Virus record (IMG/VR): IMGVR_UViG_3300022602_000024
Span: 62,001-126,000 of that record
Length of the DNA stretch: 64,000 nt
Direction: 5' to 3' (one strand)
The first letter of the stretch is position 1. The number at the start of each line of letters is the position of its first letter. This document shows, one piece after another, positions 2,121-43,780 of the stretch. Made by a program: the position numbers and the translations under genes. Under the pieces are notes generated by a model. That model made no database searches. It had not been told where the DNA came from and saw only the letters and a program-made list of their open reading frames with translations.

Positions 2121-2916
2121 GGGTGCGGTTGTATTTGCGTTCAATACCGTAGTTGATTATGTCGCTATTGCAGATCAAACCAGCAGACTAATCGCACACA
2201 AGTTGCAACTGCCTGTGACATTGATTACAGATGCTGCCGCAGATCCAAAATTTGCTTACGATAAAATCATAAGAATCAATAACGATCCTACGTCGGAAAA
2301 TCAACGAGTAGACTCGGATCACACAGTAACAGAATGGCGCAACTTTGGGAGATATCTTGCATATGAACTTACACCGTATGATGACACTATTTTGCTTGAT
2401 ACAGATTATCTGGTACTCGATTCTAGCCTTAACACCTTATTTGAGACAGATTTTGACTACCGGTTAATGCATCATAATAAAACTCCTAAGGGCGCAGACT
2501 ACGAAATGATGGGACCAACTAGTTTACCGTTTGTTTGGGCCACTGTGGTCCTGTTTAGAAAAACAGAAAAGAGTCGATTGTTTTTCAATTTGGTTGGGCG
2601 CATACAACGTCATTATCATTATTATCGTTTGTTGTATAACATACAAGATCGTAATTTTAGGAATGATTTTGCGTTTGCTATTGCCAACAACATCATTAAC
2701 GGTTATAACTTAAACGAATCGCAAAGTATACCATGGCCCATGTTTACCATAGACGAAAAAATAGTTGATATAAGGGCAGACGGCCATATACTTAGAGTAT
2801 ACCACGATGATCACGCAACTATAGTGCCGCATCAGAATATACACATAATGGATAAAGAATATTTACAAAGCAAAAACTTTAAAAGAATGATTGGAATAAT
2901 CTGTGAGCCAACATAA
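2089..2916 (+). CDS. GT-A fold glycosyltransferase-like protein (GT8-like)
   Basis: 'TPYDDTILLDTDYL' contains a DxD motif; later 'RNDFAFAIA' and a C-terminal His. Confidence 0.6.
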   Translation: MKNSNELEKSRGAVVFAFNTVVDYVAIADQTSRLIAHKLQLPVTLITDAAADPKFAYDKIIRINNDPTSENQRVDSDHTVTEWRNFGRYLAYELTPYDDTILLDTDYLVLDSSLNTLFETDFDYRLMHHNKTPKGADYEMMGPTSLPFVWATVVLFRKTEKSRLFFNLVGRIQRHYHYYRLLYNIQDRNFRNDFAFAIANNIINGYNLNESQSIPWPMFTIDEKIVDIRADGHILRVYHDDHATIVPHQNIHIMDKEYLQSKNFKRMIGIICEPT

Positions 2917-3739
2917 AGAACAACAGGGCTTTGTGACTTTTGCCATCAATACTCCCGAAGTCAACTACGGAGAACTTGCATATCTACAATGCTTGAATGT
3001 CAAATCCACGCAACAAAACAATCGTTATGCAGTTATTGTTGATGTTAACACATACGAATCGTTTACCAAACAACAACTTGATACATTTGATTATGTAATA
3101 CAAATTGGTGTTGATAGAGACAATCCATTTAGTGCAGAACCTATGGTCTGGCACCATACACCATTTAAAGAAACAATCAAATTGGAAAGTGATCTGTTGT
3201 TCACCCGCAGTATTGACCATTGGTGGACTGCGTTTAGGCTACGCAATGTTTGTTTAAGTACGCATGCCAGGGCCGCTACTGGTGCCATGCTCGATGGGTT
3301 TATTAAATATAGAGAATTATTCAAAGCCAATCAATTGCCTGACATATACAACGGATTAATGTATTTTAGATACACGCAAGAAGCACATGACTTTTTTCTT
3401 ACTGCCAGAAACATTTTTGAAAACTGGGACATTGTTAGTGCTGAATTAATCAGATGCAATGTTCCTGCCAGCACTGATGTAGTATATGCCATAGCCGCAT
3501 TGATACTAGGTGAAGACATAGTGACCATGCCCAGTCTAGACTTCCTAAATTTTGTGCATATGAAGTCAGGTTTCAATGGATGGAGCGATGCACGCACTTG
3601 GTTAGAAACAGTGGTCAACGAACGTGATGGCGATATCATACGCATCAACAACTTGAACCAATATCATCCGGTGCACTACTACGATAAAACTTACTGCACC
3701 CAAGAATTGATTAAATACTATGAGTCCAGAAGAACTTGA
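2903..3739 (+). CDS. GT-A glycosyltransferase-like protein, paralogue of the preceding gene
   Basis: 'TPFKETIKLESDLL' (ExD variant), 'YNGLMYF', 'TDVVYAIA', 'FVHMK' are collinear with 2089-2916. Confidence 0.55.
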   Translation: MSQHKEQQGFVTFAINTPEVNYGELAYLQCLNVKSTQQNNRYAVIVDVNTYESFTKQQLDTFDYVIQIGVDRDNPFSAEPMVWHHTPFKETIKLESDLLFTRSIDHWWTAFRLRNVCLSTHARAATGAMLDGFIKYRELFKANQLPDIYNGLMYFRYTQEAHDFFLTARNIFENWDIVSAELIRCNVPASTDVVYAIAALILGEDIVTMPSLDFLNFVHMKSGFNGWSDARTWLETVVNERDGDIIRINNLNQYHPVHYYDKTYCTQELIKYYESRRT

Positions 3740-4076
3740 ATTTTGGAGAGAAGTTGAATCTCTCATTGCCCCTCCTGTAGAAACTGTAATAGAATACCGC
3801 TTGCATTATGATGCTGCAGGCGATATTGTTACTGCTTCAATGGCCAATCACCCAGAATCCAACCAATACATAGTTGTAGATCGAGCCACATACGAGAGAT
3901 ATTTTGAGTATCGTGTGGAAAAAGGCCAGTTAAAAAAGATAGACAAGGACTCGGGATTTAGTGTAAAATTACACAAAGCCTCTGATGGTTTTCGAGTAGT
4001 TAAGAATCACGCTGGTATTATACTGGACGCTGACGAAACATATACAGACACAGAATATTATGACACAAATCGTTGA
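3720..4076 (+). CDS. Hypothetical protein
   Basis: 118-aa ORF overlapping both neighbours. Confidence 0.65.
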   Translation: MSPEELEFWREVESLIAPPVETVIEYRLHYDAAGDIVTASMANHPESNQYIVVDRATYERYFEYRVEKGQLKKIDKDSGFSVKLHKASDGFRVVKNHAGIILDADETYTDTEYYDTNR

Positions 4077-4956
4077 TGTAGCAGATTTAGATTGCATTTA
4101 TTTAACATATGATGAACCTCAAAAAGAAGAATTTTGGATCAAGATCCAAAACATGGTACCCTGGGCTAAACGAGTTGATGGAATCAAGGGCAGTGATGCG
4201 GCTCACAAAGCAGCCGCGGATGCTAGCAATACTGATAGGTTTGTGCTTATCGACGGCGATAACTTGCCTGATGCTGATTTCTTTAACCTCCAGTTACATT
4301 TGGATAGCACCAATGATGCTTGTGTTTTTCGTTGGCGGGCTCGTAACAGTATTAATGGCCTAATGTACGGCAATGGTGGTATGAGTTGTTGGACAAAAGA
4401 ATTCGTCTACAATATGAAAACACACGAAGCGTCAGATGGATCAGATGACACCGCAGTGGAGTTCTGTTTTGATCCCAACTACTGGGCCATGCACGACTGT
4501 TACAGCACAACCTATCCTGATGCAACACCTTATCAAGCCTGGCGTGCTGGCTATAGAGAAGGTGTTAAGATGTGTTTGGATCGTGGAGCAAAACCCACGA
4601 TAGAAGAATTTAGTCAACGTGTTCAAGGACGCAACTATGATAACCTATGCATCTGGCAAAGTGTCGGAGCAGATAACCCCAATGGCCTGTGGGCCATTTA
4701 CGGAGCACGGCTGGGTACATTCATGACCATGTGCGAAAAGTGGGAATATAGAGATGTACAAGATTTTGATAGACTCAAAAAGTTATGGGAAACTTTTGGT
4801 AAGTTAGATCCTGTAACAGAAATCAACAAGCTGACCAAACCTTTGCAAAACCGACTGGGATTACCTATTACATTATTAGATAGCAATGCTAGTCAGTTTT
4901 TTAAACATCATTATCGTGCGGTGTTTAAAAATAGAGGACCAATGATTCGTGAATAA
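4060..4956 (+). CDS. GT-A (GT2-like) glycosyltransferase-like protein
   Basis: 'RVDGIKGSDAAHKAAA...RFVLIDGDN' with a DxD motif in GT-A context. Confidence 0.6.
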   Translation: MTQIVDVADLDCIYLTYDEPQKEEFWIKIQNMVPWAKRVDGIKGSDAAHKAAADASNTDRFVLIDGDNLPDADFFNLQLHLDSTNDACVFRWRARNSINGLMYGNGGMSCWTKEFVYNMKTHEASDGSDDTAVEFCFDPNYWAMHDCYSTTYPDATPYQAWRAGYREGVKMCLDRGAKPTIEEFSQRVQGRNYDNLCIWQSVGADNPNGLWAIYGARLGTFMTMCEKWEYRDVQDFDRLKKLWETFGKLDPVTEINKLTKPLQNRLGLPITLLDSNASQFFKHHYRAVFKNRGPMIRE

Positions 4957-6334
4957 GTCAGATTTTATGGCAAGTGCTGAGTGGATGAAAGATCACTTGG
5001 GAGAAGGCCTGTGCTTGGCTAAATGGAAGCAGGTTAGTCTACATTTACCCACAGGACTCAACAATAGTTGTTACCATCCTCCACTACATCAAATTGATGC
5101 GGCAGCACTCAAAGACAATCCTGGTGCATTACACAATACTGCCCACAAAAAAGAGCAGCGCAAGATTATGCTCCGACATGAACGTCCTAGCGAGTGTCAA
5201 TACTGCTGGAACATGGAAGACCTGGGCCGGTTAAGTGACAGGCATTACCGTTCAGGTGAGCGTTGGGCTGCAGAAGAATACGACACAATCGTTAACAGTA
5301 CAGGAGATGAAGATGATGTTATCCCCGCATACGTGGAGGTTAATTTTAACCACGCTTGCAATTTGGCTTGCAGCTATTGCAGCCCTCAGTTTAGCAGTAC
5401 GTGGCAAACAGAAATTGACCGTTTTGGTGGCTATCCTACTAGTACTATTCACAACGATGCTAGTCATTTCACTGGGCGCAATCGTCCTATTCCCGCCTCC
5501 GGCGATAACCCCTATGTAGACGCATTTTGGGCCTGGTGGCCCGAACTATACCCCAAACTAAAACATTTTAGAATGACTGGTGGCGAACCATTAATGGACA
5601 AGAATACCTATAAGGTATTTGACTATGTCCTGGCTATGCCTAACCCCGAACTGCACTTAAATGTTACTAGTAACTTCAGCGTAGAAGATAGCTTGTTTGA
5701 AAAGTATATGGGCTATGTTAAACAACTATGCTCAACTCAAATTGAACACTTTATGCAGTTTGTGAGTCTGGACTCCGGCCAGTATCAACACGCAGAATAC
5801 ATTAGACATGGATTAAATTTCCATCGTATGCAAAATAACGTACATAGGTTCCTGCACGAAATTCCCTACCGCAATAGTCTAACATTTATTATTACAATGA
5901 ATAACCTGAGTGTACTAGGTCTGCAACGCCAGTTAGAATGGATACTTGACTTGCGTAAGTCCTACAGTACCACATACCAACGTGTTTGGTTTGATACTCC
6001 TGTGTTACGTAAACCTGAATGGCAAAGCCTACAGATACTGCCGCCCATATATGCTGATCATTTGGATCGTATGGCAGACTGGATGGAGTTGAATTTAGAA
6101 ACTGCCAAGGACCCATTTCATGGATTTAAAGACTATGAAGTGCAAAGACTGCGTAGAGACATTGCCTGGATGAGAGAAGGTAGCAATTTAGATCCCAAGT
6201 ATGTTATACTGCAAAAAGCAGACTTTTATAGATTTTTTAACGAACACGATAAAAGACGTCGTACAGATTTTTTAGGAACTTTTCCGCAGATGCGAGAATT
6301 TTGGAAAGAATGCGAATACTATGCCAAGAATTAA
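4949..6334 (+). CDS. Radical SAM protein with N-terminal SPASM/Twitch-like Cys domain
   Basis: CNLACSYC (CxxxCxxC), 'MTGGEPL'; N-terminal C..KW...SCYH...CQYC. Confidence 0.85.
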   Translation: MNKSDFMASAEWMKDHLGEGLCLAKWKQVSLHLPTGLNNSCYHPPLHQIDAAALKDNPGALHNTAHKKEQRKIMLRHERPSECQYCWNMEDLGRLSDRHYRSGERWAAEEYDTIVNSTGDEDDVIPAYVEVNFNHACNLACSYCSPQFSSTWQTEIDRFGGYPTSTIHNDASHFTGRNRPIPASGDNPYVDAFWAWWPELYPKLKHFRMTGGEPLMDKNTYKVFDYVLAMPNPELHLNVTSNFSVEDSLFEKYMGYVKQLCSTQIEHFMQFVSLDSGQYQHAEYIRHGLNFHRMQNNVHRFLHEIPYRNSLTFIITMNNLSVLGLQRQLEWILDLRKSYSTTYQRVWFDTPVLRKPEWQSLQILPPIYADHLDRMADWMELNLETAKDPFHGFKDYEVQRLRRDIAWMREGSNLDPKYVILQKADFYRFFNEHDKRRRTDFLGTFPQMREFWKECEYYAKN

Positions 6335-7676
6335 TAACGAAACCGACTTAGAATATAAACGCAGAGTGATTGACATCAAGTCGGATTCATTCTGCGGAGC
6401 AAAATGGTACAATGCCACTATATGGCTTGGATCGGGCATGACTACTAGTTGCCACCATCCATTGCCTCATCGAATTGACATTGATGATGTCAAACGTAAT
6501 CCCAAAGCATTACATAACACGCAAAAGAAAAAGATGGAGCGTGAACAGATGCAGAAAGGAGAGCGTCCTGCTGGATGTGAGTATTGCTGGAAAATAGAAG
6601 ACATTGGTAGAGATAATATTTCTGATCGTGTGTACAAAACAATCATTTATAAAGACGAGGAACTAAGAGATGCTTATGCTAGGCCAGCACGCCATGACGT
6701 GGATTTACGAACGCTTGAGATTGCTTTTGATCGTACATGCAATTTTGGGTGTAGTTACTGTAACCCTGCTTTCAGTAGCACTTGGGTTAAGGATATCGAT
6801 GTTCATGGACCCTATACACATCTCACTTCAGACGGCAGGAATCATTTTACTCATAGCCATGATAGTAGTCAACTTTATACTTTTAATCAACATAATCCTT
6901 ACACTGAGGCGTTCTTTAAATGGTGGGAGACCGACCTTCATAGAACGCTTACTGAACTTAGGTTAACTGGTGGCGAACCATTGATGAGTGGAGAAACCTG
7001 GAAGTTATTAGATTGGTTTCGAACTAGAGAAGTAAACCCTGACATGCGTTTTGCGCTTAACAGTAATCTTGGTGCCAAAGACGAGTTGATTGATCGCATG
7101 ATCGAAGCCACACAACATATTGATCACTTTCATTTATACACCAGTAACGAAAGTATGGGCGCACAAGCAGAATACATACGTGACGGCCTTGACTGGACGA
7201 CATGGACTGCTAATGTAGAAAAAGTGTTAAGTCAAGGGCGCATTGAAGGCTTCCATATGATGTGTACTATTAATGCATTATGCTTAGATACGCTACCTGA
7301 GTTTTTAGATCAATGTATAGCTTGGAAAACCCGTTACGGCAAAGACTATCCTACATTTACACTAAATATTTTACGCTTTCCTAGTTTTCAATCACCACTT
7401 GTGTTATCGGATGACATAAGAACATATTACAAATATAATTTACAACAGTGGTTTGACAACAATACCGCAAATCCTTTCTTACACGAAATGGAACGTAATC
7501 AAGTTCAGCGACTAATAGATTATTTAGATGTAGTTAAAACTCCGCATTCGGGCGCAGCAGAACAAACAATGCTACAACAAGACTTTAAACAATTTTACAC
7601 ACAATATGATCAGCGACGAAATAAGAATTTTATTGCAACATTTCCAGCAGTATGCGAATGGTATAATTCACTATGA
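6321..7676 (+). CDS. Radical SAM protein with N-terminal SPASM/Twitch-like domain
   Basis: CNFGCSYC, 'LTGGEPL'; N-terminal CGAKW...SCHH...CEYC. Confidence 0.85.
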   Translation: MPRINNETDLEYKRRVIDIKSDSFCGAKWYNATIWLGSGMTTSCHHPLPHRIDIDDVKRNPKALHNTQKKKMEREQMQKGERPAGCEYCWKIEDIGRDNISDRVYKTIIYKDEELRDAYARPARHDVDLRTLEIAFDRTCNFGCSYCNPAFSSTWVKDIDVHGPYTHLTSDGRNHFTHSHDSSQLYTFNQHNPYTEAFFKWWETDLHRTLTELRLTGGEPLMSGETWKLLDWFRTREVNPDMRFALNSNLGAKDELIDRMIEATQHIDHFHLYTSNESMGAQAEYIRDGLDWTTWTANVEKVLSQGRIEGFHMMCTINALCLDTLPEFLDQCIAWKTRYGKDYPTFTLNILRFPSFQSPLVLSDDIRTYYKYNLQQWFDNNTANPFLHEMERNQVQRLIDYLDVVKTPHSGAAEQTMLQQDFKQFYTQYDQRRNKNFIATFPAVCEWYNSL

Positions 7677-8989
7677 GCAAAGATTTTTATAACAAAGGGT
7701 ATGACTATAATGCTCGTAAACCGTACTTTGTTGATCAAGTAGATCTGACTGAGCAAGAGTGGGCAAGATTAACGGAAAGCGATACATTTTGTATGTTGCC
7801 TTGGATGCATATGCACGCCTTTCCTGATGGTCGTGCATATCCTTGTTGTCTAAGTGATTATTGGCATCCGGTAGGGGACTTGCGCAAGAACACCATGGCC
7901 GAAGTTTGGAATCAAGACGCATACCGGACCATGCGCAGTAACATGTTGCAGGACAAGCCATGTAAAGAATGTACCAAGTGTTACGAGCAAGAACGACATG
8001 GTGCTTTTAGTATGCGCAACGACAGTAATAGAAACTACGGGCATTTAATCAAAGAAACCAACAATACTCATGAAGATGGCACTCACCCAGAATTTAAAAT
8101 ACGATATTGGGATGTGCGTTTTAGTAATCTTTGTAATTTTAGTTGTCGCAGTTGCGGTCCTATCTTTAGCAGTAACTGGTACAATGATCATGTAAAGTTA
8201 TACAATCGTAAACCTGATGTGTTAGGCAGAGACATGGCCAGGGTAGAATACACCACAGGCGACGAAGATGATATGATAGCACAAATGATGCCGCATGTGC
8301 CCTATCTTGAACAGGTGTACTTTGCTGGTGGCGAACCGCTTATAATGAAAGAGCATTATTTCCTATTAGAAAAACTAATAGAAGCTGGCAAAACTGATAT
8401 TCGTTTGCAATACAATACAAACTTTAGTGAACTACATTTTAAAGACAAACATGTATTTGAATACTGGAAACATTTTAAAAATGTGTCAGTGGGTGCTAGT
8501 TTAGATGGCATGGGTGCACAGGCAGAACTGATACGTAAAGGAACAGATTGGCAACAAACCGTTGAAAATCGTGAACGCATGATGCGGGAAGTTCCACATG
8601 TGGATTTTTATGTCAGCAGTACAGTTAGTAGCATGAATGTATTGCACGTATTGGACTTTCATAAGTCTTGGACTAAAATGGGATTAATCAATGCCAAAGA
8701 TTGGAATATCAATATTTGTCAAAGTCCTGAATGGTACCGTATAGATATATTCCCAGACGAGTTTAAACAACGTGTTATCTATCCTGCTTATGAAGAGCAT
8801 ATTGCTTGGCTTGATCCACAGGATACTCTGCGTCGTGCAACTACAGGATATCAAAGTTTATTGAGTTTAATGCGCGGCAATGATGGCACTCAACATTGGC
8901 CCAGATTTGTTGAGGAGATATCTGTATTAGATAATCTACGAAATGAAAACTTTTGGGAGACATTTCCTGAGTTTGAGGAATTAAAATGA
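7673..8989 (+). CDS. Radical SAM protein with N-terminal SPASM/Twitch-like domain
   Basis: CNFSCRSC, 'FAGGEPL', 'YNTN'; N-terminal CMLPW...PCC...CTKC. Confidence 0.85.
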   Translation: MSKDFYNKGYDYNARKPYFVDQVDLTEQEWARLTESDTFCMLPWMHMHAFPDGRAYPCCLSDYWHPVGDLRKNTMAEVWNQDAYRTMRSNMLQDKPCKECTKCYEQERHGAFSMRNDSNRNYGHLIKETNNTHEDGTHPEFKIRYWDVRFSNLCNFSCRSCGPIFSSNWYNDHVKLYNRKPDVLGRDMARVEYTTGDEDDMIAQMMPHVPYLEQVYFAGGEPLIMKEHYFLLEKLIEAGKTDIRLQYNTNFSELHFKDKHVFEYWKHFKNVSVGASLDGMGAQAELIRKGTDWQQTVENRERMMREVPHVDFYVSSTVSSMNVLHVLDFHKSWTKMGLINAKDWNINICQSPEWYRIDIFPDEFKQRVIYPAYEEHIAWLDPQDTLRRATTGYQSLLSLMRGNDGTQHWPRFVEEISVLDNLRNENFWETFPEFEELK

Positions 8990-10197
8990 CATTACCAGAA
9001 ACAATTTGTATGCTGCCTTGGATCAGCATTGAAGCCAGTCCAATGGGCACAACTCGCCCGTGTTGTTTAGCACAAGAAGAGATTATAGACGATGAAGGTA
9101 ATAAGATAGACTTACGCACGAGTACCTTACATGATGCATACCAAAGCGAGTATATGCAAAACTTACGTAGGCAATTTCGTGCAGGAGAAAAACCTGCAAC
9201 ATGCAGAATGTGTTGGGAAGAAGAGGCGGCTGGCAGAGCAAGCAAACGTATTAATAGTCGTATACGGTTAAAAGAATCGTATACACAAGTTGATTGGATG
9301 AACGATACTCCAGACCAACTCTGGTTTATTGATTTAAAACTAGGCAACATCTGTAACTTAAAATGTCGTATATGCGGATCTTGGTCTAGTAGCAAATGGG
9401 CCGCAGAAGAAATGGATTACTTGCCCAAGGGGACAGATAAAAAATCGCACATTGCCTATACATGGCTCAAAGCTGGTAGCTGGCCTGAAGAAAGCCCGGA
9501 CTTTTGGGACAACTTAAAATCCTTGTTGCCTGATATTAAGTACTTTGAGTTTACTGGCGGCGAGCCTTGGCTGATCGAGGAACACTGGGAGTTGTTGGAG
9601 TTTGCTGTTGCAGAAGGCTACGGCAAGGGTATTGATATACATTACAATACCAATGCTACACAGGCACCAACTAGATTAATACCATTATTAGACAAACTTG
9701 GTAGAGTTGATATTGCATTCAGCGTTGACAACGTAGGTGATCGTTTTGAATATGAACGTTATGGCGCTAAATGGACAGAAGCCAACAACATAATCGATGC
9801 CACACATGGATTGCGTACTAAGTATAACAACATTACCACTCAGTTGTGCTTTACTATCAATATTCAAAATGTCTACTATCTAGACGAGTTGTTGTCTTGG
9901 GCTAACACCAAAGGTTTTAACAGTATCTACTTCAATATGTTACAGAGCCCGGACCGTATGAGTATACAACGTATGACTCCGGTTGCACAGGAGTTGGTAC
10001 TAAACAAATTAAAAACACATTTTTGGAAATCTACATATTATCAACAAGAAATTGATAACGTCATCAAGTTTATTGAAAACGGCTCTGGTAGCGATGGTCA
10101 AGACTTTGTGGAAAAGATGCAGCAGACAGATTCTTATCGTCGACAAAACTTCATGGACACGCATTCTGAAATAGCACGAGCAATGGGATATGAATAA
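8986..10197 (+). CDS. Radical SAM protein with N-terminal SPASM/Twitch-like domain
   Basis: CNLKCRIC, 'FTGGEP', 'YNTN'; N-terminal CMLPW...PCC...CRMC. Confidence 0.85.
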   Translation: MTLPETICMLPWISIEASPMGTTRPCCLAQEEIIDDEGNKIDLRTSTLHDAYQSEYMQNLRRQFRAGEKPATCRMCWEEEAAGRASKRINSRIRLKESYTQVDWMNDTPDQLWFIDLKLGNICNLKCRICGSWSSSKWAAEEMDYLPKGTDKKSHIAYTWLKAGSWPEESPDFWDNLKSLLPDIKYFEFTGGEPWLIEEHWELLEFAVAEGYGKGIDIHYNTNATQAPTRLIPLLDKLGRVDIAFSVDNVGDRFEYERYGAKWTEANNIIDATHGLRTKYNNITTQLCFTINIQNVYYLDELLSWANTKGFNSIYFNMLQSPDRMSIQRMTPVAQELVLNKLKTHFWKSTYYQQEIDNVIKFIENGSGSDGQDFVEKMQQTDSYRRQNFMDTHSEIARAMGYE

Positions 10198-11509
10198 ACC
10201 CGAAACACTATGCATGGCGCCGTGGACGCACACCTATCTAAGTCCACAAACTGAGCGTAGGATGTGTTGTGCCAGTCGTGAGCCTGCACAAAACTTTCAG
10301 CAGTACATTGACACCAGTTCAGGTACCGGGCGGTATATACCCGTTACTTTAGAACAACATTGGAACGGGGAACACATGCGAGATGTTCGCCGACGTATGA
10401 TGGCCGGAGAGACGCTACCCGAATGTGAAGTATGCAATGACAAGTTATTGAATACCTCAGTTTACCGTAGTTATTTTAATCAACTTTTTGGGCATAAGTA
10501 CGATAGTATAGCAGCAACTACAGATGCTACAGGTTACACTACAATGCTGCCTGTGAGCTGGGACTATCGGTTTAGTAATCTATGTAATTTCAAATGCCGT
10601 ATGTGTGGCGATATGTTGAGCAGTGCGTGGGAATCAGAACAACGCACTCACGAAATGATTGATTGGACAAATCCAAAAAATAACTGGATGCGGCCCGAAG
10701 TCAAACAACAAATTGAACAGTTTCAAGATACTCAAATTGAACAAGAGTTTAGCGCAGCAGTAGAAGAACATAGAGTTGAGGAAGTATACTGGGTAGGCGG
10801 TGAACCACTGATGTATGAACAACATTGGCGGTATATGAAACGTATTGTTGAATTAGGAGATGGCCCACGTGTCTACGCTAGATATAATACTAATCTTTCC
10901 CGTGTGCATTATCGTGGCGTTAGCCTGTATGGTGATATATTGCAAAATCTCCGAGATTGGCAAATCTGCGCTTCGCTCGACGGAACGGGACCGATTGGCG
11001 AGTACATTAGAACAGGCCTTGACTACAGTTTGTGGCTTGAGAATTTCAGTCAAGGAGTTGAAATTGCAAGTCATGCGAGACAAATGCGAATTGATTTCAC
11101 ACTTACCCTGCCAGGTATGTTCGAAGTCGGGCGAGTGCAAGCACTTGCAGACAATCTACAAGTTGGACTCCTGGCCAAAGTAATTTTTAGTTTTAGCCCG
11201 GACATAGTTATGAGCCCGTTAGCACTACCTCGGGAGTTATTACATTCCTGGATAGATGAAATATTGGGTGACACCCCAGGGGGTATTAACCATGTACCTG
11301 ATAACAGTCCCTTACGAGACATACTTGTCCAGCTAAAAACTAGACCCACATTTGAGGAACAATGGCCTGACCAATATCAAGCAGGACTCAAAAAGGGCAA
11401 AGCAAGAGTATTAGAACTTGAACAAATTCGTCGAGATGTGTATACTATGAGAGATATACTTGCAGAAAGACCTGACGTATTGGCATGGTGGGACTCGATA
11501 AATGTTTAA
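10190..11509 (+). CDS. Radical SAM protein with N-terminal SPASM/Twitch-like domain
   Basis: CNFKCRMC, 'WVGGEPL', 'YNTN'; N-terminal CMAPW...MCC...CEVC. Confidence 0.85.
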   Translation: MNKPETLCMAPWTHTYLSPQTERRMCCASREPAQNFQQYIDTSSGTGRYIPVTLEQHWNGEHMRDVRRRMMAGETLPECEVCNDKLLNTSVYRSYFNQLFGHKYDSIAATTDATGYTTMLPVSWDYRFSNLCNFKCRMCGDMLSSAWESEQRTHEMIDWTNPKNNWMRPEVKQQIEQFQDTQIEQEFSAAVEEHRVEEVYWVGGEPLMYEQHWRYMKRIVELGDGPRVYARYNTNLSRVHYRGVSLYGDILQNLRDWQICASLDGTGPIGEYIRTGLDYSLWLENFSQGVEIASHARQMRIDFTLTLPGMFEVGRVQALADNLQVGLLAKVIFSFSPDIVMSPLALPRELLHSWIDEILGDTPGGINHVPDNSPLRDILVQLKTRPTFEEQWPDQYQAGLKKGKARVLELEQIRRDVYTMRDILAERPDVLAWWDSINV

Positions 11510-11792
11510 AATACCTATAGCAGTACCGCATCCGCACTTTGATAACTCAATGATGCATAACAGGCAAGAAATCAAACGTGATCATATACAAAATGAACAC
11601 AACCGTAAGGTGCATGAATATTATCAAGCAAAGAATCAAGATTGGTACAAAAAGCGTATACTGGTGCAAGAATTGCATGAGTACCAAGACTATTTGGCTA
11701 TTAATCAATATTTAAATCTAAAACGGCATATTGAGTATGGAAATTATAGATACAGTATTACGTTAGGAAATAACTTAGATGTGTATGCATGA
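11502..11792 (+). CDS. Hypothetical protein
   Basis: 96 aa, overlap-coupled on both sides. Confidence 0.55.
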   Translation: MFKIPIAVPHPHFDNSMMHNRQEIKRDHIQNEHNRKVHEYYQAKNQDWYKKRILVQELHEYQDYLAINQYLNLKRHIEYGNYRYSITLGNNLDVYA

Positions 11793-12862
11793 ATAAAGTG
11801 ACTGTAACCTTACGTAACCCATTGAACAAAACGGATACCATTGGCTATACTATTATAGTCAATGACACACCAATGGCTCAACGTTGGTATGCTGCACTAC
11901 AAGATAACTTGCGAGCTAATTTGTATTTAGAAAAGAACTTTTGCTTTTTAGGATTTCCTGATAGTGCAAGAGATTTAGAATTTATCTGTAAAGAATTAGA
12001 TTGGGCCAAACGTCAAATCAACCGGTTCTTTGACGCCGACGATTATTATATCCCAGAATTCTTTACTCCTAGTACTCTGCGTGACGGGCTAAATCCCAAT
12101 CAAGAAATAATGAATAGACTACACAATCACTTTGAACATCTTCAAGGCACAGTTGGGGGATTAAGTGATTGGTATCGACGTGCTGACTACGAAACAAAGT
12201 TTGCTATTCGGCAACTAAATAACTTGTGCCACGAAGCAGAAAGTTTAATGCTAAGTCAGCGTAAAAAAGTAGAGTTGCCTGAGTGGGTACGTCCTAGTCA
12301 AATCACAACGTTTTTAAATTGCCCAAGACTAGAATTCCCTGCAGAATACAAAACAACATTTGACGAAACCCGTTATGATCGACGTTTTGGTGAGGTATAT
12401 TTACATTGGACACAGATTGGTAAAACCCTATATGAAGTATATCGTGATGAAAATGGTGTTGATATTGATCAGGCCACTTGCGATGCTATTACTCATCTGC
12501 GTTTCTATAGTGGAGAGTTTGACGTTGAGTGGGCTCAAGATGTGGCGTTCCATGGGCCCCATCCGTGGCATACGAAAGAGATGATGGGCTTTAGGGCTTG
12601 GCTTACCCGTAACGGATTTGATGTTAATGACACACAATACAATTACGGGTATCACCCAGTTGGACAAGTGGATCTACAAGGTAGTTTTGGAACTACAGAT
12701 TTCCGTGAGGTGTGGCCCGTCCTTTCAAAATATCTAGACATATACAAGATCACTGCAGGTTCGGCATCAGCGACATTTGATTACACCTGGACTGACGCAG
12801 ATTATTATCAACAACAAATCAACAGAATGAAACCGGGATATGATTTTAGTAGCCGGGGGTGA
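11789..12862 (+). CDS. Hypothetical protein (His-containing motifs LHNHFEHL, LNNLCHE)
   Basis: 357-aa ORF inside the operon; family not recognised. Confidence 0.7.
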   Translation: MNKVTVTLRNPLNKTDTIGYTIIVNDTPMAQRWYAALQDNLRANLYLEKNFCFLGFPDSARDLEFICKELDWAKRQINRFFDADDYYIPEFFTPSTLRDGLNPNQEIMNRLHNHFEHLQGTVGGLSDWYRRADYETKFAIRQLNNLCHEAESLMLSQRKKVELPEWVRPSQITTFLNCPRLEFPAEYKTTFDETRYDRRFGEVYLHWTQIGKTLYEVYRDENGVDIDQATCDAITHLRFYSGEFDVEWAQDVAFHGPHPWHTKEMMGFRAWLTRNGFDVNDTQYNYGYHPVGQVDLQGSFGTTDFREVWPVLSKYLDIYKITAGSASATFDYTWTDADYYQQQINRMKPGYDFSSRG

Positions 12863-13565
12863 TAGTTTTACATGGGGAACGGAGATGGCAAACTGCACAG
12901 AAACAGTTTATAGTCAATCTACGTTTCCTGCACTATTAGCACGTGCACAAGGCTTGGATTATCAGTGCGTAGCTCGCCCCGGCAATGCCAACGATGCTAT
13001 TGCACGCATGGTTATTGATCGTTGTGAAACGGTTACAGATACTCCTGTAGTTATAGTTGCTTGGTCTTTTGTTACTAGATATGAATTCAGATTTACGTAT
13101 CCTATCAACAGTCCTATATCGCCTTGGTGTTCAATAACTCCGGACTTAAACAAAGCACAGGTGCATCATTTTGCCAATGATTTTTTCAAGCACGTGGGCA
13201 CAGATCCAGATTATCAAAAGTATAATACACTACGTGCTATTATATTGTTGCAAACATATCTGGAACAAAAAAGTATTCCTTATTTGTTTTTACCTACTGA
13301 CAATCATTTTTATGTTAGCAATACTGCAGGTGCTGATCCAATAGTGGCAACATTATACAATATGGTTAATTGGGATCATTGGTTCTTTTTTCCGGGTGCA
13401 ACAGAAGCCTGGAATACTACAGATCCTAGAGGTTTTTATCAGTGGGCAGTGGAAACTAAATACAAATGCGGACAGTATCAACATCCATTAGAAGACGCAC
13501 ATCGAGATGCCGCACAACTAATAGAAAGAAAATTCAATGAACTTTTTAAAAAGACTTTACAATAA
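12840..13565 (+). CDS. SGNH/GDSL-like hydrolase or acyltransferase
   Basis: 'AGGDSFTWG', 'PGNANDAIAR', 'IVAWS', C-terminal 'HPLEDAH'. Confidence 0.6.
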   Translation: MILVAGGDSFTWGTEMANCTETVYSQSTFPALLARAQGLDYQCVARPGNANDAIARMVIDRCETVTDTPVVIVAWSFVTRYEFRFTYPINSPISPWCSITPDLNKAQVHHFANDFFKHVGTDPDYQKYNTLRAIILLQTYLEQKSIPYLFLPTDNHFYVSNTAGADPIVATLYNMVNWDHWFFFPGATEAWNTTDPRGFYQWAVETKYKCGQYQHPLEDAHRDAAQLIERKFNELFKKTLQ

Positions 13566-13638
13566 AGTCACGCTGGAAATTCGCTATCGCCGAAAATTAA
13601 AAGAACTACGTAAAAGAGATCCATTTATTTACAAATGA
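13537..13638 (+). CDS. Small basic 33-aa protein (not in the ORF track)
   Basis: ATG 13537 to TGA 13638 reads MNFLKRLYNKVTLEIRYRRKLKELRKRDPFIYK. It fills the gap between two SGNH genes and ends in an ATGA overlap with 13635. Confidence 0.65.
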   Translation: MNFLKRLYNKVTLEIRYRRKLKELRKRDPFIYK

Positions 13639-14273
13639 AGATATTAACAGTTGGTGATAGTTTTACCTTTGGAGAAGAATTAGAAGACAGAAACAACGCT
13701 TGGCCGTTTCAGTTAGGCGAACTGCTGGATGCTGAAGTTGTTAATATGGCCAAACCTGGATCCGGCAACAAGCGCATGATCCGCTATGTAATAGATTATG
13801 TTGCTACAGTAGAACGTCCTGACCTTGTTGTAGTTGGTTGGAGCAGTCCTGGGCGTATGGAATTTGCTGACGAGGATGGATTTTTTGATCTTTGGCCTGG
13901 ATATAGTGGACGTATGTTTATGAACGAACAGCCCTGGAGAGTTGAGCTACTAAATTACATGGATCGTCACCATAATGAGAAATATCTGTATAAACAATAC
14001 CTATTAGATGTTATACTATTACAAAGTTTCCTAGAACAACAAAATATACAGTATGTAATGCTTAGAACAGTGGGCAACGAGTTTTATCATAATGCGTATT
14101 ACAAAGAAACAAAACCTACTGCGGATTTAATCAATACCAAAACTTATTTAGGATGGCCTACCCAAGGGATGGCAGAATGGACACAAGGATGTGCCCGAGG
14201 ACCCGGAGGGCATTTTTTAGACGACGGACACAATCGAATAGCAAATAAGATATTAAAACACATACAAGGTTAA
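13635..14273 (+). CDS. SGNH/GDSL-like protein
   Basis: 'VGDSFTFG', 'PGSGNKRMIR', 'VVGWS', 'GPGGHFLDDGH'. Confidence 0.6.
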   Translation: MKILTVGDSFTFGEELEDRNNAWPFQLGELLDAEVVNMAKPGSGNKRMIRYVIDYVATVERPDLVVVGWSSPGRMEFADEDGFFDLWPGYSGRMFMNEQPWRVELLNYMDRHHNEKYLYKQYLLDVILLQSFLEQQNIQYVMLRTVGNEFYHNAYYKETKPTADLINTKTYLGWPTQGMAEWTQGCARGPGGHFLDDGHNRIANKILKHIQG

Positions 14274-14276
14274 TGA

Positions 14277-14939
14277 TTGATGATTTACTGTATTGGGGAT
14301 AGTTTTACTTACGGGGATGAATTGGCTGATAGGCAAAAATCCGCTTGGCCCGCATTGGTAGGAAACTATTTTAACAAACCTGTAACTAATCTTGGGCGTC
14401 GTGCAGTCGGCAATACTCGCATTGTTAAACGCACTATAGATGCAGCATTTGCTGCCGATGCAGAGTTGATTATAATTGCTTGGGCTTCGCCCTACAGAAC
14501 AGAATTTTTCAATGACATTCCTTATGACATATGGGCTGGCATGCAAACTGATTACTTGAATGAAGAACAAGCATCATTAGCAAGATCATTAACTCTAGTA
14601 AACAATAAACAATTTGATTTGTGGCAATATCGTAAATGGTTAAGAGATGTTATTTTGATACAAAATTTATTGCAAAATCAAAATAAGAACTATATGATGT
14701 TTATGGCCTATACTCCTTGGGGCCCGATTCCGGGCACCGAAGATTTATGGGACAAAGTCAACTCGCAGTATTTCATGGGGCATGCTGCTCCTTCTAACAA
14801 TATTGACCGCTATGAAAATTTTGGTCATTGGGCTGCAGGGTGCCCAAAAGGACCGGGCGGACATCCATTAGAACTAGCACATCAAAAAGTAGCAAATAAA
14901 ATAAATGAATATATTCGGAATCTCAGCTGGCTTTCATGA
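14277..14939 (+). CDS. SGNH/GDSL-like protein
   Basis: 'IGDSFTYG', 'VGNTRIVK', 'IIAWAS', 'GPGGHPLELAH'. Confidence 0.6.
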   Translation: MMIYCIGDSFTYGDELADRQKSAWPALVGNYFNKPVTNLGRRAVGNTRIVKRTIDAAFAADAELIIIAWASPYRTEFFNDIPYDIWAGMQTDYLNEEQASLARSLTLVNNKQFDLWQYRKWLRDVILIQNLLQNQNKNYMMFMAYTPWGPIPGTEDLWDKVNSQYFMGHAAPSNNIDRYENFGHWAAGCPKGPGGHPLELAHQKVANKINEYIRNLSWLS

Positions 14940-16407
14940 TGCTGCAGTAACAGTATTACAAGACGACGAGATTGTCTTTGCTGGTCATGCTGAACGTTAT
15001 AGCAAACGCAAAAATGATGCCAATCTCAATGACGCCTTGATCGCAGATGCGTTATCTTATGGCAATCCAGACCAAGTAGTGTACTACGAACGTCCCTGGG
15101 TTAAAAAACTTCAACAACTTTATTCGGGACAACTTCGTGAAGCAACGGATTTTAAGAATTTTACTCTTGATCAGCATATTCGTAAACATTTATCTATTCC
15201 TGTTCATCAGGAGCGACTATTACATGCTGGTAGACGAAATATGTCCCACCATTTATCACATTGTGCCGCCGGATTCCAAACCAGCCCCTATAGTAAAGCC
15301 ACAGTTGTTGTTATAGATGCCATTGGTGAGTTTGATACTATTAGCATATGGGGCGCAGAATACGTCAATGGTCGTGCTAGATATAAAAGACTTTGGGGAC
15401 AGAAATATCCGCATAGCATAGGATTATTTTATAGTGCTATGACACAGGCAGTTGGACTAAAGCCCAACGAAGAAGAATACATTATGATGGGTATGGCAGC
15501 GTATGGTAACGATGCTGGACTTTCAAGTCTGATGAAAATGCAAACAGTAGCAGACGAATGGGAAATACTGTTTCGTGACAACTTGCATGCGGGAATAGAT
15601 TTGCAAGTCCTAAAGCGATTTGACGATATTGATTTAGCACACGGTGCACAAAAATTAGCCGAAAATCTCATATTCAACGTAATGGCTCGTGCACGAAAAT
15701 TAAACTGGAGCAACAATCTAGTTTACATGGGCGGAGTGGCTTTAAACTGTTTGGCCAACAGAAACTTAGGAGATTATTTTGAAAATATTTGGATTATGCC
15801 TAACCCTGGCGATGCTGGGTCTAGCCTGGGTGCTGCCGCACTCGCTCATGGTGGTCGTATTCGTTGGCGTAATGCTTACCTTGGGCATAATATTGCCGGT
15901 GATTACCCTGTTGCTGACTTGTTGGACGTATTACTCACTGACAAAATTGCAGGAGTTGCAAGTGGACGAGCCGAGTTTGGTCCCCGGGCGTTGGGCAACC
16001 GAAGCCTCTTGGCAGACCCACGTGGCATCGAGATTAAAGGGAAAGTAAATGAAATCAAACGCAGACAAAAATTTAGACCTTTCGCCCCGGTTATTTTGGA
16101 AGAGATGGCTGATCAGTACTTTGATATTCCTAGCGGCTGGAGTGACAGCAGGTATATGCAAATCGTCGGTCGTTGTCGGCATCCTGACCTATTTCCTGCT
16201 GTCGTTCATGTGGACAGCACTAGTCGTATCCAGACTGTCCCGCCAGATGGATCAGGAATAAGAGAGCTATTAGAAAAATGGTATGTAATGACCGATTGTC
16301 CTATGTTGCTTAATACTAGTTTAAATATACGTGGCGAGCCCATGGTCAATGATCGTGCGGATGCTGATCGCTTTGAAGCGTTATATAACATAAAGGTCTG
16401 TTCGTGA
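14905..16407 (+). CDS. O-carbamoyltransferase (NodU/CmcH/TobZ family)
   Basis: 'HDAAV', 'ERYSKRKND', 'HHLSH', 'DAIGE', 'GGVALNC', 'GDAG', 'EFGPRALGNRSLLADP', 'FRPFAP', 'LLNTSLN'. Confidence 0.93.
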   Translation: MNIFGISAGFHDAAVTVLQDDEIVFAGHAERYSKRKNDANLNDALIADALSYGNPDQVVYYERPWVKKLQQLYSGQLREATDFKNFTLDQHIRKHLSIPVHQERLLHAGRRNMSHHLSHCAAGFQTSPYSKATVVVIDAIGEFDTISIWGAEYVNGRARYKRLWGQKYPHSIGLFYSAMTQAVGLKPNEEEYIMMGMAAYGNDAGLSSLMKMQTVADEWEILFRDNLHAGIDLQVLKRFDDIDLAHGAQKLAENLIFNVMARARKLNWSNNLVYMGGVALNCLANRNLGDYFENIWIMPNPGDAGSSLGAAALAHGGRIRWRNAYLGHNIAGDYPVADLLDVLLTDKIAGVASGRAEFGPRALGNRSLLADPRGIEIKGKVNEIKRRQKFRPFAPVILEEMADQYFDIPSGWSDSRYMQIVGRCRHPDLFPAVVHVDSTSRIQTVPPDGSGIRELLEKWYVMTDCPMLLNTSLNIRGEPMVNDRADADRFEALYNIKVCS

Positions 16408-40555: not shown

Positions 40556-40820
40556 AGATTGATGACCATTTCTTAAGTTTTTCAATTTTGTGTTGCTTTG
40601 CAATGTCTAATTGTACAGTATCTAGTACACCTTGGTCAACTAAAATGTCGATTAATGCCAACATATCTCCAACTTCCATTACCAAAGTTTCTCTGTGCGG
40701 TAAATTAGTATGATGCGAAAGTTCATCTAATCCAAATCTTCTGATTTTACTAACTTCTACTATTACTTCTGCACATTCTTCTTGTAGTATACCCAAGGCT
40801 TCTTCTATTTTTGAATTCAT
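40548..40820 (-). CDS. MazG-like NTP pyrophosphohydrolase
   Basis: 'LQEECAEV...EVGDMLA' all-alpha NTP-PPase motif. Confidence 0.7.
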   Translation of the reverse strand: MNSKIEEALGILQEECAEVIVEVSKIRRFGLDELSHHTNLPHRETLVMEVGDMLALIDILVDQGVLDTVQLDIAKQHKIEKLKKWSSIYE

Positions 40821-42085: not shown

Positions 42086-42120
42086 GTGTGTTTTCTCTGT
42101 ATTCTTTTTTGGCTCTACGC

Positions 42121-43664: not shown

Positions 43665-43780
43665 GATAGCAAATCCTCATTCCACTCTCTATGACCCTCT
43701 CTAAAGGCCATATTGGCTTGTGTTTCTCTAACTTCTACACGATAGCACCATAAACGTTGTTCTAACCTTGCGTTAAACAT
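43661..43780 (-). pseudogene. Remnant 3' end of a second queD allele (39-aa mini-ORF)
   Basis: Reads MFNARLEQRLWCYRVEVRETQANMAFREGHREWNEDLLS, versus the QueD C-terminus DRVWCSKVEVRETPSNMAYRQGHREDGEF. Confidence 0.8.

What the first reader, a model, noticed from the sequence alone, without database searches (positions are those of the whole stretch)
4949..11509. Five tandem radical SAM paralogues (eight in the window plus QueE) with the auxiliary Cys domain at the N-terminus, in two subtypes
Seen: each has a SPASM/Twitch-like Cys set before the CxxxCxxC core, whereas this domain is normally C-terminal. Subtype A (4949, 6321, 40817) has C..KW...SC[YH][HR]...C.YC. Subtype B (7673, 8986, 10190, 61688) has C..P[WF]...CC...C..C. 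56169 is a further variant. The copies are divergent and all frames are intact. Inference: they act in sequence or as a complex, with different auxiliary cluster ligation. This many Fe-S enzymes is a large cost for a phage.
Basis: partly seen in the sequence, partly recalled or inferred. Interest (0 to 1): 0.65.

Follow-up and report, generated by a model that had tools for sequence, protein, structure and literature searches.

The report
Phage radical SAM array, N-terminal twitch
A 354-kb freshwater jumbo phage carries five adjacent, strongly conserved radical SAM enzymes whose second iron-sulfur domain sits in front of the catalytic core instead of behind it; they belong to a curated but uncharacterised family, and their neighbours suggest they remodel sugars of a glycan.

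Summary
Five overlapping + strand genes (4949-11509) each encode a radical SAM enzyme with CX3CX2C preceded by a Cys-rich domain. Two more copies lie at 40817 and 61688, and a divergent variant lies at 56169. Seven of the eight score 232-402 bits on NCBIfam NF033640, "N_Twi_rSAM" (cut-off 170). The architecture is therefore already curated, but I found no paper on it.

A profile of the N-terminal domain matches only the C-terminal twitch domain of BtrN, with all four cluster cysteines aligned. The two subtypes are real: A forms one clade, and B has an extra invariant Cys. Both keep the same four cysteines, so "different ligation" is not supported.

The genome holds 12 family copies and 17 radical SAM ORFs. 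Five relatives hold 7-14 copies each. All 38 fully covered related loci keep the five genes colinear, and dN/dS is 0.02-0.14.

Neighbours include GT-A-like and GT8-like glycosyltransferases, three SGNH proteins, a carbamoyltransferase, a DegT aminotransferase and an NDP-sugar dehydratase. A bacterial chromosome carries four tandem copies in an O-antigen locus, one fused to Wzt.

Best reading: stepwise radical tailoring of glycan sugars. The substrate is inferred, not shown.

The parts
4949..6334 (+). ORF1: N-terminal-twitch radical SAM, subtype A (C22, C41, C83, C86; CX3CX2C at 137)
   Evidence: NF033640 scores 301 bits. All listed Cys are invariant in 49 orthologues, as is C455. dN/dS is about 0.05.
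6321..7676 (+). ORF2: N-terminal-twitch radical SAM, subtype A (C25, C44, C86, C89; CX3CX2C at 140)
   Evidence: NF033640 scores 306 bits. It is sister to ORF1 in the tree. Ralstonia phage RsoM2USA_202 is 52% identical. dN/dS is 0.08-0.13.
7673..8989 (+). ORF3: N-terminal-twitch radical SAM, subtype B (C40, C58, C59, C100, C103; CX3CX2C at 154)
   Evidence: NF033640 scores 402 bits, and Pfam SPASM covers residues 40-103. The AF2 model has pLDDT 93.9 and pTM 0.91. dN/dS is 0.02-0.03.
8986..10197 (+). ORF4: N-terminal-twitch radical SAM, subtype B (C8, C26, C27, C73, C76; CX3CX2C at 123)
   Evidence: NF033640 scores 322 bits, and Pfam SPASM covers residues 8-77. The Cys are invariant in 57 orthologues. 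dN/dS is 0.04.
10190..11509 (+). ORF5: N-terminal-twitch radical SAM, subtype B (C8, C26, C27, C79, C82; CX3CX2C at 132)
   Evidence: NF033640 scores 273 bits. It is sister to ORF3. dN/dS is 0.05-0.14.
4060..4956 (+). GT-A-fold glycosyltransferase-like protein with an invariant DGD (65-67); its end overlaps the start of ORF1
   Evidence: The AF2 model has pLDDT 89.5. Its Foldseek neighbours are GT-A glycosyltransferases: RmlT, PcManGT, TarP, WrtF and PBCV-1 A64R, at TM 0.28-0.36. Orthologues are 62-74% identical and always sit upstream of ORF1. The pairing is kept even in the distant relative L160.
2903..3739 (+). GT8-like (glycogenin-like) putative glycosyltransferase
   Evidence: The orthologue profile matches glycogenin-1 with E 1.5e-3 over residues 4-111. 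The match is marginal.
11789..12862 (+). Conserved protein of unknown function, always downstream of ORF5
   Evidence: Orthologues occur in 49 loci at 35-79% identity. There is no Pfam, PHROG or PDB match.
12840..14939 (+). Three SGNH/GDSL-like (DUF6071) proteins: 12840-13565, 13635-14273 and 14277-14939
   Evidence: Pfam DUF6071 and Lipase_GDSL_2. Only 13635-14273 passes DUF6071's cut-off (42.9 bits against 27); 12840-13565 (16.1 bits) and 14277-14939 (18.4 bits) fall below it. All Lipase_GDSL_2 scores are below cut-off.
14905..16407 (+). Carbamoyltransferase (NodU/CmcH/TobZ type)
   Evidence: Pfam Carbam_trans_N scores 117 bits and Carbam_trans_C 154 bits. Orthologues are conserved at 56-67% in relatives and at 47% in RsoM2USA.
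23047..25112 (-). DegT/DnrJ/EryC1 sugar aminotransferase (23047-24165) and NDP-sugar epimerase/dehydratase (24138-25112)
   Evidence: Pfam DegT scores 254 bits, and Epimerase/GDP_Man_Dehyd score 144 and 110 bits.
40817..42124 (-). Dispersed subtype A copy, lying between a QueE-like gene and a DadA-like FAD oxidoreductase
   Evidence: NF033640 scores 244 bits. It is sister clade to ORF1 plus ORF2.
61688..62983 (-). Dispersed subtype B copy next to the family B DNA polymerase
   Evidence: NF033640 scores 232 bits. PolB lies at 58954-61644.
56169..57230 (-). Divergent radical SAM with an N-terminal SPASM-like domain; it falls outside NF033640
   Evidence: Pfam SPASM covers residues 32-98 and Radical_SAM covers 119-251. 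NF033640 scores only 30.7 bits. It forms its own clade with array-inserted copies from relatives.

Best explanation
**What it is.** The five genes are an anciently duplicated, co-transcribed set of radical SAM enzymes of the N-terminal-twitch family (NCBIfam NF033640).

**How each enzyme most likely works.**
- A radical SAM [4Fe-4S] cluster binds on CX3CX2C.
- An auxiliary [4Fe-4S] cluster binds on four invariant Cys of a BtrN-type twitch domain. Here that domain is encoded before the barrel instead of after it.
- The enzyme cleaves SAM to a 5'-deoxyadenosyl radical.
- The radical abstracts a hydrogen from an unactivated sugar carbon.
- The substrate radical is then either oxidised through the auxiliary cluster (dehydrogenase route, as in BtrN) or re-protonated from the opposite face by a Cys (epimerase route, as in HygY and NeoN).

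**What the set does.** The five non-redundant paralogues act on different positions or intermediates of one glycan or sugar-nucleotide pathway. That pathway also uses the flanking glycosyltransferase-like, SGNH, carbamoyltransferase, aminotransferase and dehydratase genes. The product decorates either the virion or the infected cell surface.

**Shown:** family membership, domain order, Cys conservation, co-conservation of the five genes, purifying selection, and the glycan-gene neighbourhood in both the phage and a bacterium.

**Inferred:** the presence of two clusters, the sugar substrate, the reaction type, and the target of the glycan.
For: **Family and cofactor sites.**
- NF033640 scores 232-402 bits for seven window copies.
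- Across 12 paralogues the invariant residues are four N-terminal Cys, CX3CX2C and GGE. All are also invariant within each orthogroup of 49-59 sequences.
- The N-domain profile hits only BtrN's twitch domain (4m7s residues 164-243, E 4.4e-4). The aligned Cys fall at C169, C187, C232 and C235.
- The AF2 model is confident (pLDDT 93.9). It shows a beta-hairpin at 46-56 and helices at 75-108 in the N-domain.
- The nearest solved cores are BlsE, CteB, SkfB, MoaA and anSME, at Z 11.5-12.3.

**One functional unit.**
- Gene ends overlap.
- 38 of 38 fully covered loci keep all five genes colinear.
- dN/dS is 0.02-0.14.
- The paralogues are more conserved (55-95% identity) than most flanking genes.

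**Glycan link.**
- The 4060 protein has a GT-A fold, and 2903 is GT8-like.
- Pfam gives SGNH x3, carbamoyltransferase, DegT and NDP-sugar dehydratase.
- An NDP-sugar epimerase/dehydratase sits inside the array in L062 and L063.
- Bacterial chromosome G511:C19 has four tandem copies between RmlC/RmlD/Wzm and TylF-like and SAM methyltransferases plus WbsX. One copy is fused in frame to Wzt + Wzt_C.
- The G582 copy lies 1.2 kb from a GT2 gene, with one uncharacterised ORF between them.
- RsoM2USA keeps an ORF2 orthologue near SGNH and carbamoyltransferase orthologues.
Against: - No substrate, product or cluster content has been measured for any family member that I could find.
- Structural neighbours of the core include peptide maturases as often as sugar or nucleotide enzymes, and their Z scores are tied within 1.
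- The best PDB sequence hit is a RiPP cyclopropyl synthase, and it covers the core only.
- The dispersed copies in the same genome lie next to replication, repair, chaperonin and tail-fibre-like genes, not glycan genes.
- Copy 40817 lies among FolE, QueD-like and QueE-like genes, so the family may not have a single substrate class.
- The GT assignments of 4060 and 2903 rest on low TM scores (0.28-0.36) and a marginal E-value.
- Only two genuine bacterial contexts were seen.
Confidence: 0.5

Rival explanations
1. They are peptide or protein maturases. They would install thioether, C-C or epimerised residues in a phage peptide or a virion protein, as most SPASM/twitch radical SAM enzymes do.
For: - Pfam SPASM hits.
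- The best PDB sequence hit is the cyclopropylglycine synthase entry 8vpo.
- SkfB, CteB, SuiB and anSME are among the top structural neighbours.
Against: - No Pfam family other than Radical_SAM, SPASM and Fer4_12 reaches its cut-off on any of the five proteins, so no PqqD-like peptide-recognition domain was detected.
- Overlapping gene ends leave no room for a precursor gene inside the array.
- The only nearby small ORF (11502-11792, 96 aa) has no homologue in any fetched locus.
- There are only 4-5 N-terminal Cys (a sixth in some ORF3 orthologues), not the 7-8 of a full SPASM domain.
- The neighbours, and the bacterial contexts, are glycan genes.
- A large virion protein as substrate cannot be excluded.
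Confidence: 0.15
2. They modify nucleotides or DNA bases. Examples would be further steps on 7-deazaguanine, another hypermodified base, or viperin-like nucleotide products.
For: - Weak hits to viperin, MoaA and QueE models.
- Copy 40817 lies between a QueE-like gene and DadA-like, cupin and QueD-like genes, with FolE nearby.
- The genome also has Dam and ThyA.
Against: - Those hits cover only the shared core and lie far below their cut-offs.
- The tandem array is about 28 kb from the deazaguanine genes and is flanked by glycosyltransferase-like, SGNH and carbamoyltransferase genes.
- Bacterial members sit in O-antigen loci.
Confidence: 0.15
3. They build a diffusible sugar-derived small molecule, such as an aminoglycoside-like pseudo-oligosaccharide, rather than a surface glycan.
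For: - By my own knowledge and the reference titles seen, the characterised twitch sugar enzymes BtrN and HygY, and the radical SAM epimerase NeoN, are aminoglycoside enzymes.
- A TobZ/NodU-type carbamoyltransferase and a DegT aminotransferase are present.
Against: - No inosamine or 2-deoxy-scyllo-inosose synthase type gene was seen among the proteins scanned.
- GT-A-like proteins and the Wzt fusion in bacteria point to polymers.
Confidence: 0.08
4. The copies are redundant or decaying duplicates with no specific roles.
For: Copy number is high and varies between genomes, from 7 to 14.
Against: - All frames are intact.
- There are five distinct orthogroups, each 55-95% conserved, with invariant cofactor Cys.
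- dN/dS is 0.02-0.14.
- 38 of 38 loci are colinear.
Confidence: 0.02

Closest known systems
NCBIfam NF033640 'N_Twi_rSAM' (twitch domain-containing radical SAM protein)
   Same: Seven window proteins, and 11 in the genome, pass the curated cut-off over the full model length. They share the domain order: twitch first, then the radical SAM core, then a helical C-terminal region.
   Different: The family is a subfamily-level model with no assigned activity, and I found no paper on it. Three features here are unusual. Copy number is 7-14 per phage genome. There is a fixed five-gene array. The nearest sequence and structure clusters are predominantly viral, while only 3 of 802 sampled bacterial genomes had a match, one of them through co-binned phage contigs.
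BtrN (butirosin 2-deoxy-scyllo-inosamine dehydrogenase), the prototype twitch radical SAM enzyme; PDB 4M7S/4M7T
   Same: It is the only significant PDB match to the N-terminal domain profile. The four auxiliary-cluster Cys and the hairpin-helix layout align. It has a sugar substrate, as proposed here.
   Different: In BtrN the twitch domain follows the core (residues 164-243 of 269). Here it precedes the core, a permuted order. The BtrN core was not among the significant full-length sequence hits. The proteins here are about 170 residues longer and carry an extra helical C-terminal domain.
HygY (twitch radical SAM sugar epimerase) and NeoN (radical SAM sugar epimerase)
   Same: They are the proposed mechanistic analogues: H-abstraction from a sugar carbon, with a Cys as H-atom donor. 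NeoN Cys249 is described in PMC10991966, and the HygY title is cited there. Each orthogroup here has its own extra conserved core Cys: C455, C321, C349, C288 and C260.
   Different: The extra Cys lie in different alignment columns, so their role is speculative.
SPASM-domain peptide maturases (anSME, SkfB, CteB, SuiB, and the cyclopropyl synthase of PDB 8VPO)
   Same: They share the core fold (Z 11.3-12.1 for anSME, SkfB, CteB and SuiB; 9.2 for 8VPO) and match the Pfam SPASM model.
   Different: In those enzymes the auxiliary domain is C-terminal, usually binds two clusters through 7-8 Cys, and comes with a peptide-recognition domain or a precursor gene. None of these features is found here.
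BlsE (cytosylglucuronate decarboxylase)
   Same: It is the top structural neighbour of the core (Z 12.3, 221 residues), and it acts on a sugar nucleoside.
   Different: Identity is 15%, the match covers the core only, and its Z score is tied with those of peptide maturases.

Membership tests
NCBIfam NF033640 N_Twi_rSAM | Full-length HMM score at or above the curated cut-off of 170 bits | tested here: met
   ORF1-5 score 301, 306, 402, 322 and 273 bits. Copy 40817 scores 244 and 61688 scores 232. ORF 56169 scores 30.7 and is not a member.
NCBIfam NF033640 N_Twi_rSAM | Twitch-type Cys domain N-terminal to the CX3CX2C core | tested here: met
   Four Cys invariant in 12 paralogues precede CX3CX2C. 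Pfam SPASM lies at the N-terminus of ORF3-5, with ORF5 just below cut-off. The domain profile aligns to BtrN's twitch domain.
Radical SAM superfamily | CX3CX2C cluster motif and GGE SAM-binding motif in a partial TIM barrel | tested here: met
   C154, C158, C161 and G219-G220-E221 (ORF3 numbering) are invariant. The model's core matches radical SAM structures at Z 10-12.
Twitch radical SAM enzymes (BtrN type) | Auxiliary [4Fe-4S] cluster ligated by four Cys of a hairpin-helix domain | tested here: inconclusive
   The sequence alignment puts the four Cys on BtrN C169, C187, C232 and C235, and the model's secondary structure fits.
Twitch radical SAM enzymes (BtrN type) | Twitch domain C-terminal to the core | tested here: not met
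   The domain lies at residues 8-110, before the core, in all copies.
SPASM radical SAM peptide maturases | Seven or eight Cys for two auxiliary clusters | tested here: not met
   Subtype A has 4 N-terminal Cys and subtype B has 5. A sixth occurs in 43 of 59 ORF3 orthologues.
SPASM radical SAM peptide maturases | Peptide-recognition (PqqD-like) domain or an adjacent conserved precursor gene | tested here: not met
   No PqqD-like Pfam hit. Gene ends overlap. The 96-aa ORF at 11502 is not conserved.
QueE (for ORF 39710-40603) | Score above an equivalog cut-off | tested here: not met
   The best score is 51 bits against a cut-off of 260. It is QueE-like only, although FolE and a QueD-like gene are nearby.
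Glycan or sugar-nucleotide tailoring enzymes (functional class) | Acts on a sugar substrate | not testable with these tools
   Only context is available: GT-A-like, GT8-like, SGNH, carbamoyltransferase, DegT and dehydratase genes in the phage, and an O-antigen locus with a Wzt fusion in a bacterium.

The most novel reading that the evidence does not exclude
A widespread clade of freshwater jumbo phages encodes its own multi-step radical glycan-editing pathway. Five to seven N-terminal-twitch radical SAM enzymes would each epimerise, oxidise or deoxygenate a different unactivated carbon of a sugar or of an assembled glycan. The result would be a surface structure, on the virion or on the infected cell, that non-radical glycan-tailoring enzymes are not known to make. 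This would give the first chemistry for the uncharacterised NF033640 family, and the same chemistry would apply to bacterial O-antigens whose export ATPase Wzt is fused to such an enzyme.
Probability: 0.3. Interest if true: 0.8.

Novelty: new member of a known kind. Interest (0 to 1): 0.55.

Why it matters
- **Unknown chemistry.** The family is curated but has no known reaction. A phage clade that keeps five non-redundant copies under strong purifying selection, within 17 radical SAM genes per genome, points to chemistry the phage needs.
- **A testable substrate class.** The glycan-gene context, seen independently in a bacterial O-antigen locus with a Wzt fusion, supplies a concrete hypothesis.
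- **A culturable handle.** Ralstonia phage RsoM2USA carries an ORF2 orthologue beside the same carbamoyltransferase.
- **Enzymology.** The permuted twitch domain is a natural experiment on how an auxiliary cluster can be delivered to the radical SAM barrel.
- **Phage biology.** Oxygen-sensitive glycan tailoring in lake phages bears on host recognition, on exclusion of other phages, and on where in the water column infection is productive.

Tried and rejected
- **Near-DNA search of isolated phages:** no match.
- **Literature searches:** searches for N_Twi_rSAM, NF033640, N-terminal twitch or SPASM, and radical SAM with O-antigen gave nothing relevant.
- **Papers not held:** the BtrN, HygY and SPASM-review papers are not in the library. 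BtrN residue numbers were therefore read from the PDB alignment.
- **Scan set-up errors:** 'relatives' is not available for a virus record, and a locus cannot be given as 'of'.
- **Detour for bacterial handles:** I used ThyA to obtain bacterial genome handles. The first centre belonged to a small-genome phylum, and 401 genomes there had no match.
- **N-domain search:** the single-sequence search of the PDB found nothing. Only the profile worked.
- **Neighbour annotation:** PHROGs gave nothing for the unknown neighbours. PDB profiles gave nothing for 4060 or 11789.
- **RiPP precursor idea:** the 96-aa ORF at 11502-11792 is not conserved.
- **Dispersed copies:** their neighbourhoods gave no consistent functional signal.
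- **Electron donors:** no flavodoxin or 2Fe-2S ferredoxin gene was found in the genome.
- **RNA evidence:** no RNA run holds the stretch.
  - Read laying, because only DNA contigs were on offer.
  - Complex prediction, because I make no binding claim.
  - The search of protein representatives, which is costly and was not needed once the family scan had named the family.

Full report
**Where the window lies.** The window is bases 62001-126000 of a 354,429-bp IMG/VR virus record that CheckV rates 98% complete. GC content is about 41%. Its family B DNA polymerase is closest to those of Sinorhizobium phage Phosso (52%), Agrobacterium phage Atu_ph07 (47.5%) and Rak2-like jumbo phages (about 43%). 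The stretch occurs in freshwater and lake metagenomes from many studies, but no RNA run holds it.

**Observation.** Five + strand ORFs run from 4949 to 11509, and their ends overlap by 4-14 nt. Each has CX3CX2C at residue 123-154, preceded by 4-6 Cys.
- Pfam finds Radical_SAM in all five. It finds SPASM at the N-terminus of ORF3, ORF4 and ORF5, with ORF5 just under the cut-off.
- NCBIfam places all five, plus 40817(-) and 61688(-), in NF033640 'N_Twi_rSAM' at 232-402 bits against a cut-off of 170.
- ORF 56169(-) fails that model. It still has an N-terminal SPASM-like domain.
- ORF 39710(-) is QueE-like only.

However, the N-terminal placement is already curated as a family.

**Is the N-terminal domain really a twitch domain?**
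- Across the 12 genomic paralogues, which share only 15-33% identity, the invariant residues are four N-terminal Cys, the CX3CX2C triad, GGE, one Ser and two Arg (R115, R288).
- A profile of 43 N-terminal domains finds one significant family in the PDB: the C-terminal twitch domain of BtrN (4m7s residues 164-243, E 4.4e-4). The four Cys fall on BtrN C169, C187, C232 and C235.
- An AlphaFold2 model of ORF3 (121-sequence alignment, pLDDT 93.9, pTM 0.91) shows the expected beta-hairpin and helices in this domain.
- No solved structure matches the whole chain; the best TM by query is 0.36.
- The core resembles BlsE, CteB, SkfB, MoaA, anSME and viperin at Z 11-12. These scores are tied.

The domain order is therefore permuted relative to every solved twitch or SPASM enzyme.

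**Subtypes.** In a maximum-likelihood tree of 62 family members, subtype A lies in one clade (SH-aLRT 96, with one CC-type row inside it) nested within subtype B diversity.
- ORF1 and ORF2 are sisters, and 40817 is the next branch.
- ORF3 and ORF5 are sisters.
- Subtype B has one extra invariant Cys next to the second ligand.
- Both subtypes keep the same four Cys, so a different ligation is not indicated.
- Each orthogroup also has its own conserved core Cys, in a different alignment column in each.

**Conservation.**
- The ORF3 protein has more than 6,700 homologues in metagenomes. Orthologues lie on contigs of up to 374 kb.
- In 54 IMG/VR loci and four further contigs, five orthogroups recur at 55-95% identity.
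- All 38 loci that include both flanks have all five genes in the same order.
- Only three of those 38 are as compact as the window. The others carry one to three inserted genes, mostly at the ORF1|ORF2 and ORF4|ORF5 junctions.
- The inserts include 32 further divergent radical SAM genes and, in L062 and L063, an NDP-sugar epimerase/dehydratase.
- dN/dS (NG86) against the closest relatives is 0.02-0.14. Synonymous sites are mostly saturated, so these values are rough.
- The genome has 12 family copies, 11 of them over the cut-off, and 17 Radical_SAM ORFs in all.
- Five relatives have 7-14 copies each.
- No flavodoxin or 2Fe-2S ferredoxin gene was found.

**Context in the phage.**
- The gene whose end overlaps ORF1 (4060-4956) models confidently, and its structural neighbours are all GT-A glycosyltransferases. 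It has an invariant DGD motif.
- ORF 2903-3739 is weakly glycogenin-like.
- Downstream lie a conserved unknown protein, three SGNH/DUF6071 proteins, a carbamoyltransferase and a P-loop kinase fused to DUF2061.
- A DegT aminotransferase and an NDP-sugar dehydratase lie 12 kb further on.
- The dispersed copies sit among replication, repair, chaperonin and tail-fibre-like genes.

**Context in bacteria.** The family is rare in the cellular genomes sampled.
- None of 401 genomes of a small-genome phylum had a match.
- Three of 401 genomes of the phylum of G008 had a match. One of those three is G008 itself, through co-binned phage contigs.
- G511:C19 is a true chromosomal contig, with DnaE and AccA. 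It carries four tandem copies inside an ABC-transporter-type O-antigen locus containing RmlC, RmlD, Wzm, Wzt, a TylF-like O-methyltransferase, a SAM methyltransferase and WbsX.
- One of those copies is fused in frame to Wzt and its carbohydrate-binding Wzt_C domain.
- The G582 copy lies 1.2 kb from a GT2 gene, with one uncharacterised ORF between them.
- The nearest ESM Atlas clusters, by sequence features and by shape, are viral. They include an 851-aa double-length form.

**Isolated phages.**
- Ralstonia phage RsoM2USA_202, annotated as hypothetical, is 52% identical to ORF2. It lies near SGNH and carbamoyltransferase orthologues.
- Vibrio phages K566 and K567 each have the family; in K566, whose region was fetched, there are four clustered copies.

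**Interpretation.** The best-supported reading is a co-transcribed set of two-cluster radical SAM enzymes that tailor sugars of one glycan pathway step by step. The mechanism is proposed by analogy with BtrN, HygY and NeoN (plus my own knowledge).
- Family membership, domain order, conservation and context are shown.
- Cluster content, substrate and reaction type are inferred.

Three rival readings remain open at lower probability: peptide or protein maturation, nucleotide or DNA modification, and a small-molecule glycoside. Decay of redundant copies is excluded.

**Limits.**
- Model coordinates could not be inspected.
- The large profile search, the read-mapping tool and the complex-prediction tool were not used.
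- Only two bacterial contexts were examined.

Noticed in passing
window 39710-47842 (- strand): A 7-deazaguanine-type gene set lies here: FolE (47093-47842), QueD-like (44322-44801) and QueE-like (39710-40603). Between them sit N_Twi copy 40817, a DadA-like FAD oxidoreductase (42121-43326; 439 bits on PRK12409, below its cut-off of 494) and a cupin (43326-43664). One family copy might therefore act on a deazapurine or amino-acid-derived substrate.
   Followed up: partly
window 11502-11792 (+): A 96-aa ORF fills a 280-nt gap between ORF5 and the conserved 11789 gene. It has no homologue in any of the fetched related loci or elsewhere in the genome. It is either a strain-specific ORFan or non-coding.
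   Followed up: yes
window 4949-11509 compared with L060/L061: Identity to the same relative is mosaic: ORF3 95%, ORF5 85%, ORF1 82%, ORF4 79%, ORF2 65%. This suggests recombination inside the array.
   Followed up: no
L066, L146, L149, L155, L156 (genome handle G008): A MAG labelled 'uncultured Polynucleobacter' holds a ThyA contig 72% identical to the phage's and ten N_Twi matches on small contigs. These are phage contigs binned with that MAG. This is a weak hint that Polynucleobacter, a freshwater bacterium of similar GC content (own knowledge), is the host.
   Followed up: partly
L160 (G007:C200, 'Fischerella sp.' MAG contig): The whole 19-kb contig is syntenic with the window. It has homologues of 747, 2089, 2903, the 4060-ORF1 pair, ThyA, DegT and others at 30-73% identity. 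It is therefore a distant relative of this phage mis-binned in a cyanobacterial MAG. It keeps only the GT-A-like gene plus an ORF1-type rSAM.
   Followed up: partly
L158:8579-11143 (- strand; G511:C19): A single 854-aa frame fuses the O-antigen export ATPase Wzt (ABC_tran + Wzt_C) to a complete N-terminal-twitch radical SAM enzyme, with an 18-residue linker.
   Followed up: partly
ESM Atlas cluster (row 1): A viral cluster of 73 proteins of about 851 aa matches the ORF3 model at TM 0.94 over 423 residues. These are double-length forms: possible fusions of two such enzymes, or of one with another domain.
   Followed up: no
genome 291726-293345 (L163:5727-7346, -): The phage encodes a Cpn60/GroEL-type chaperonin (261 bits) directly beside an N_Twi copy at genome 290546-291676.
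   Followed up: no
genome 323979-324476 and 231772-232290 (- strand): Two further Radical_SAM ORFs (frames of 498 and 522 aa) score highest on Pfam Radical_SAM and are not N_Twi members. With a 328-aa copy at genome 254438-255424, they bring the genome total to 17.
   Followed up: no
window 18948-22163 (+) and 4060-4956 (+): The 1071-aa protein at 18948 may share a domain with the GT-A-like 4060 protein. L160 ORFs hit both, at 28-39% identity. The 1071-aa protein may therefore carry a glycosyltransferase-like module too.
   Followed up: no
window 33305-34234 (-) and 25109-26077 (-): A Dam-family adenine methyltransferase (147 bits) and a thymidylate synthase (350 bits) are encoded here.
   Followed up: no
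L065 (Ralstonia phage RsoM2USA, MG752970.1 126846-128228): RsoM2USA_202 is annotated 'hypothetical protein' but is a clear N-terminal-twitch radical SAM enzyme, 52% identical to ORF2. RsoM2USA_199 is a carbamoyltransferase orthologue at 47% identity.
   Followed up: yes
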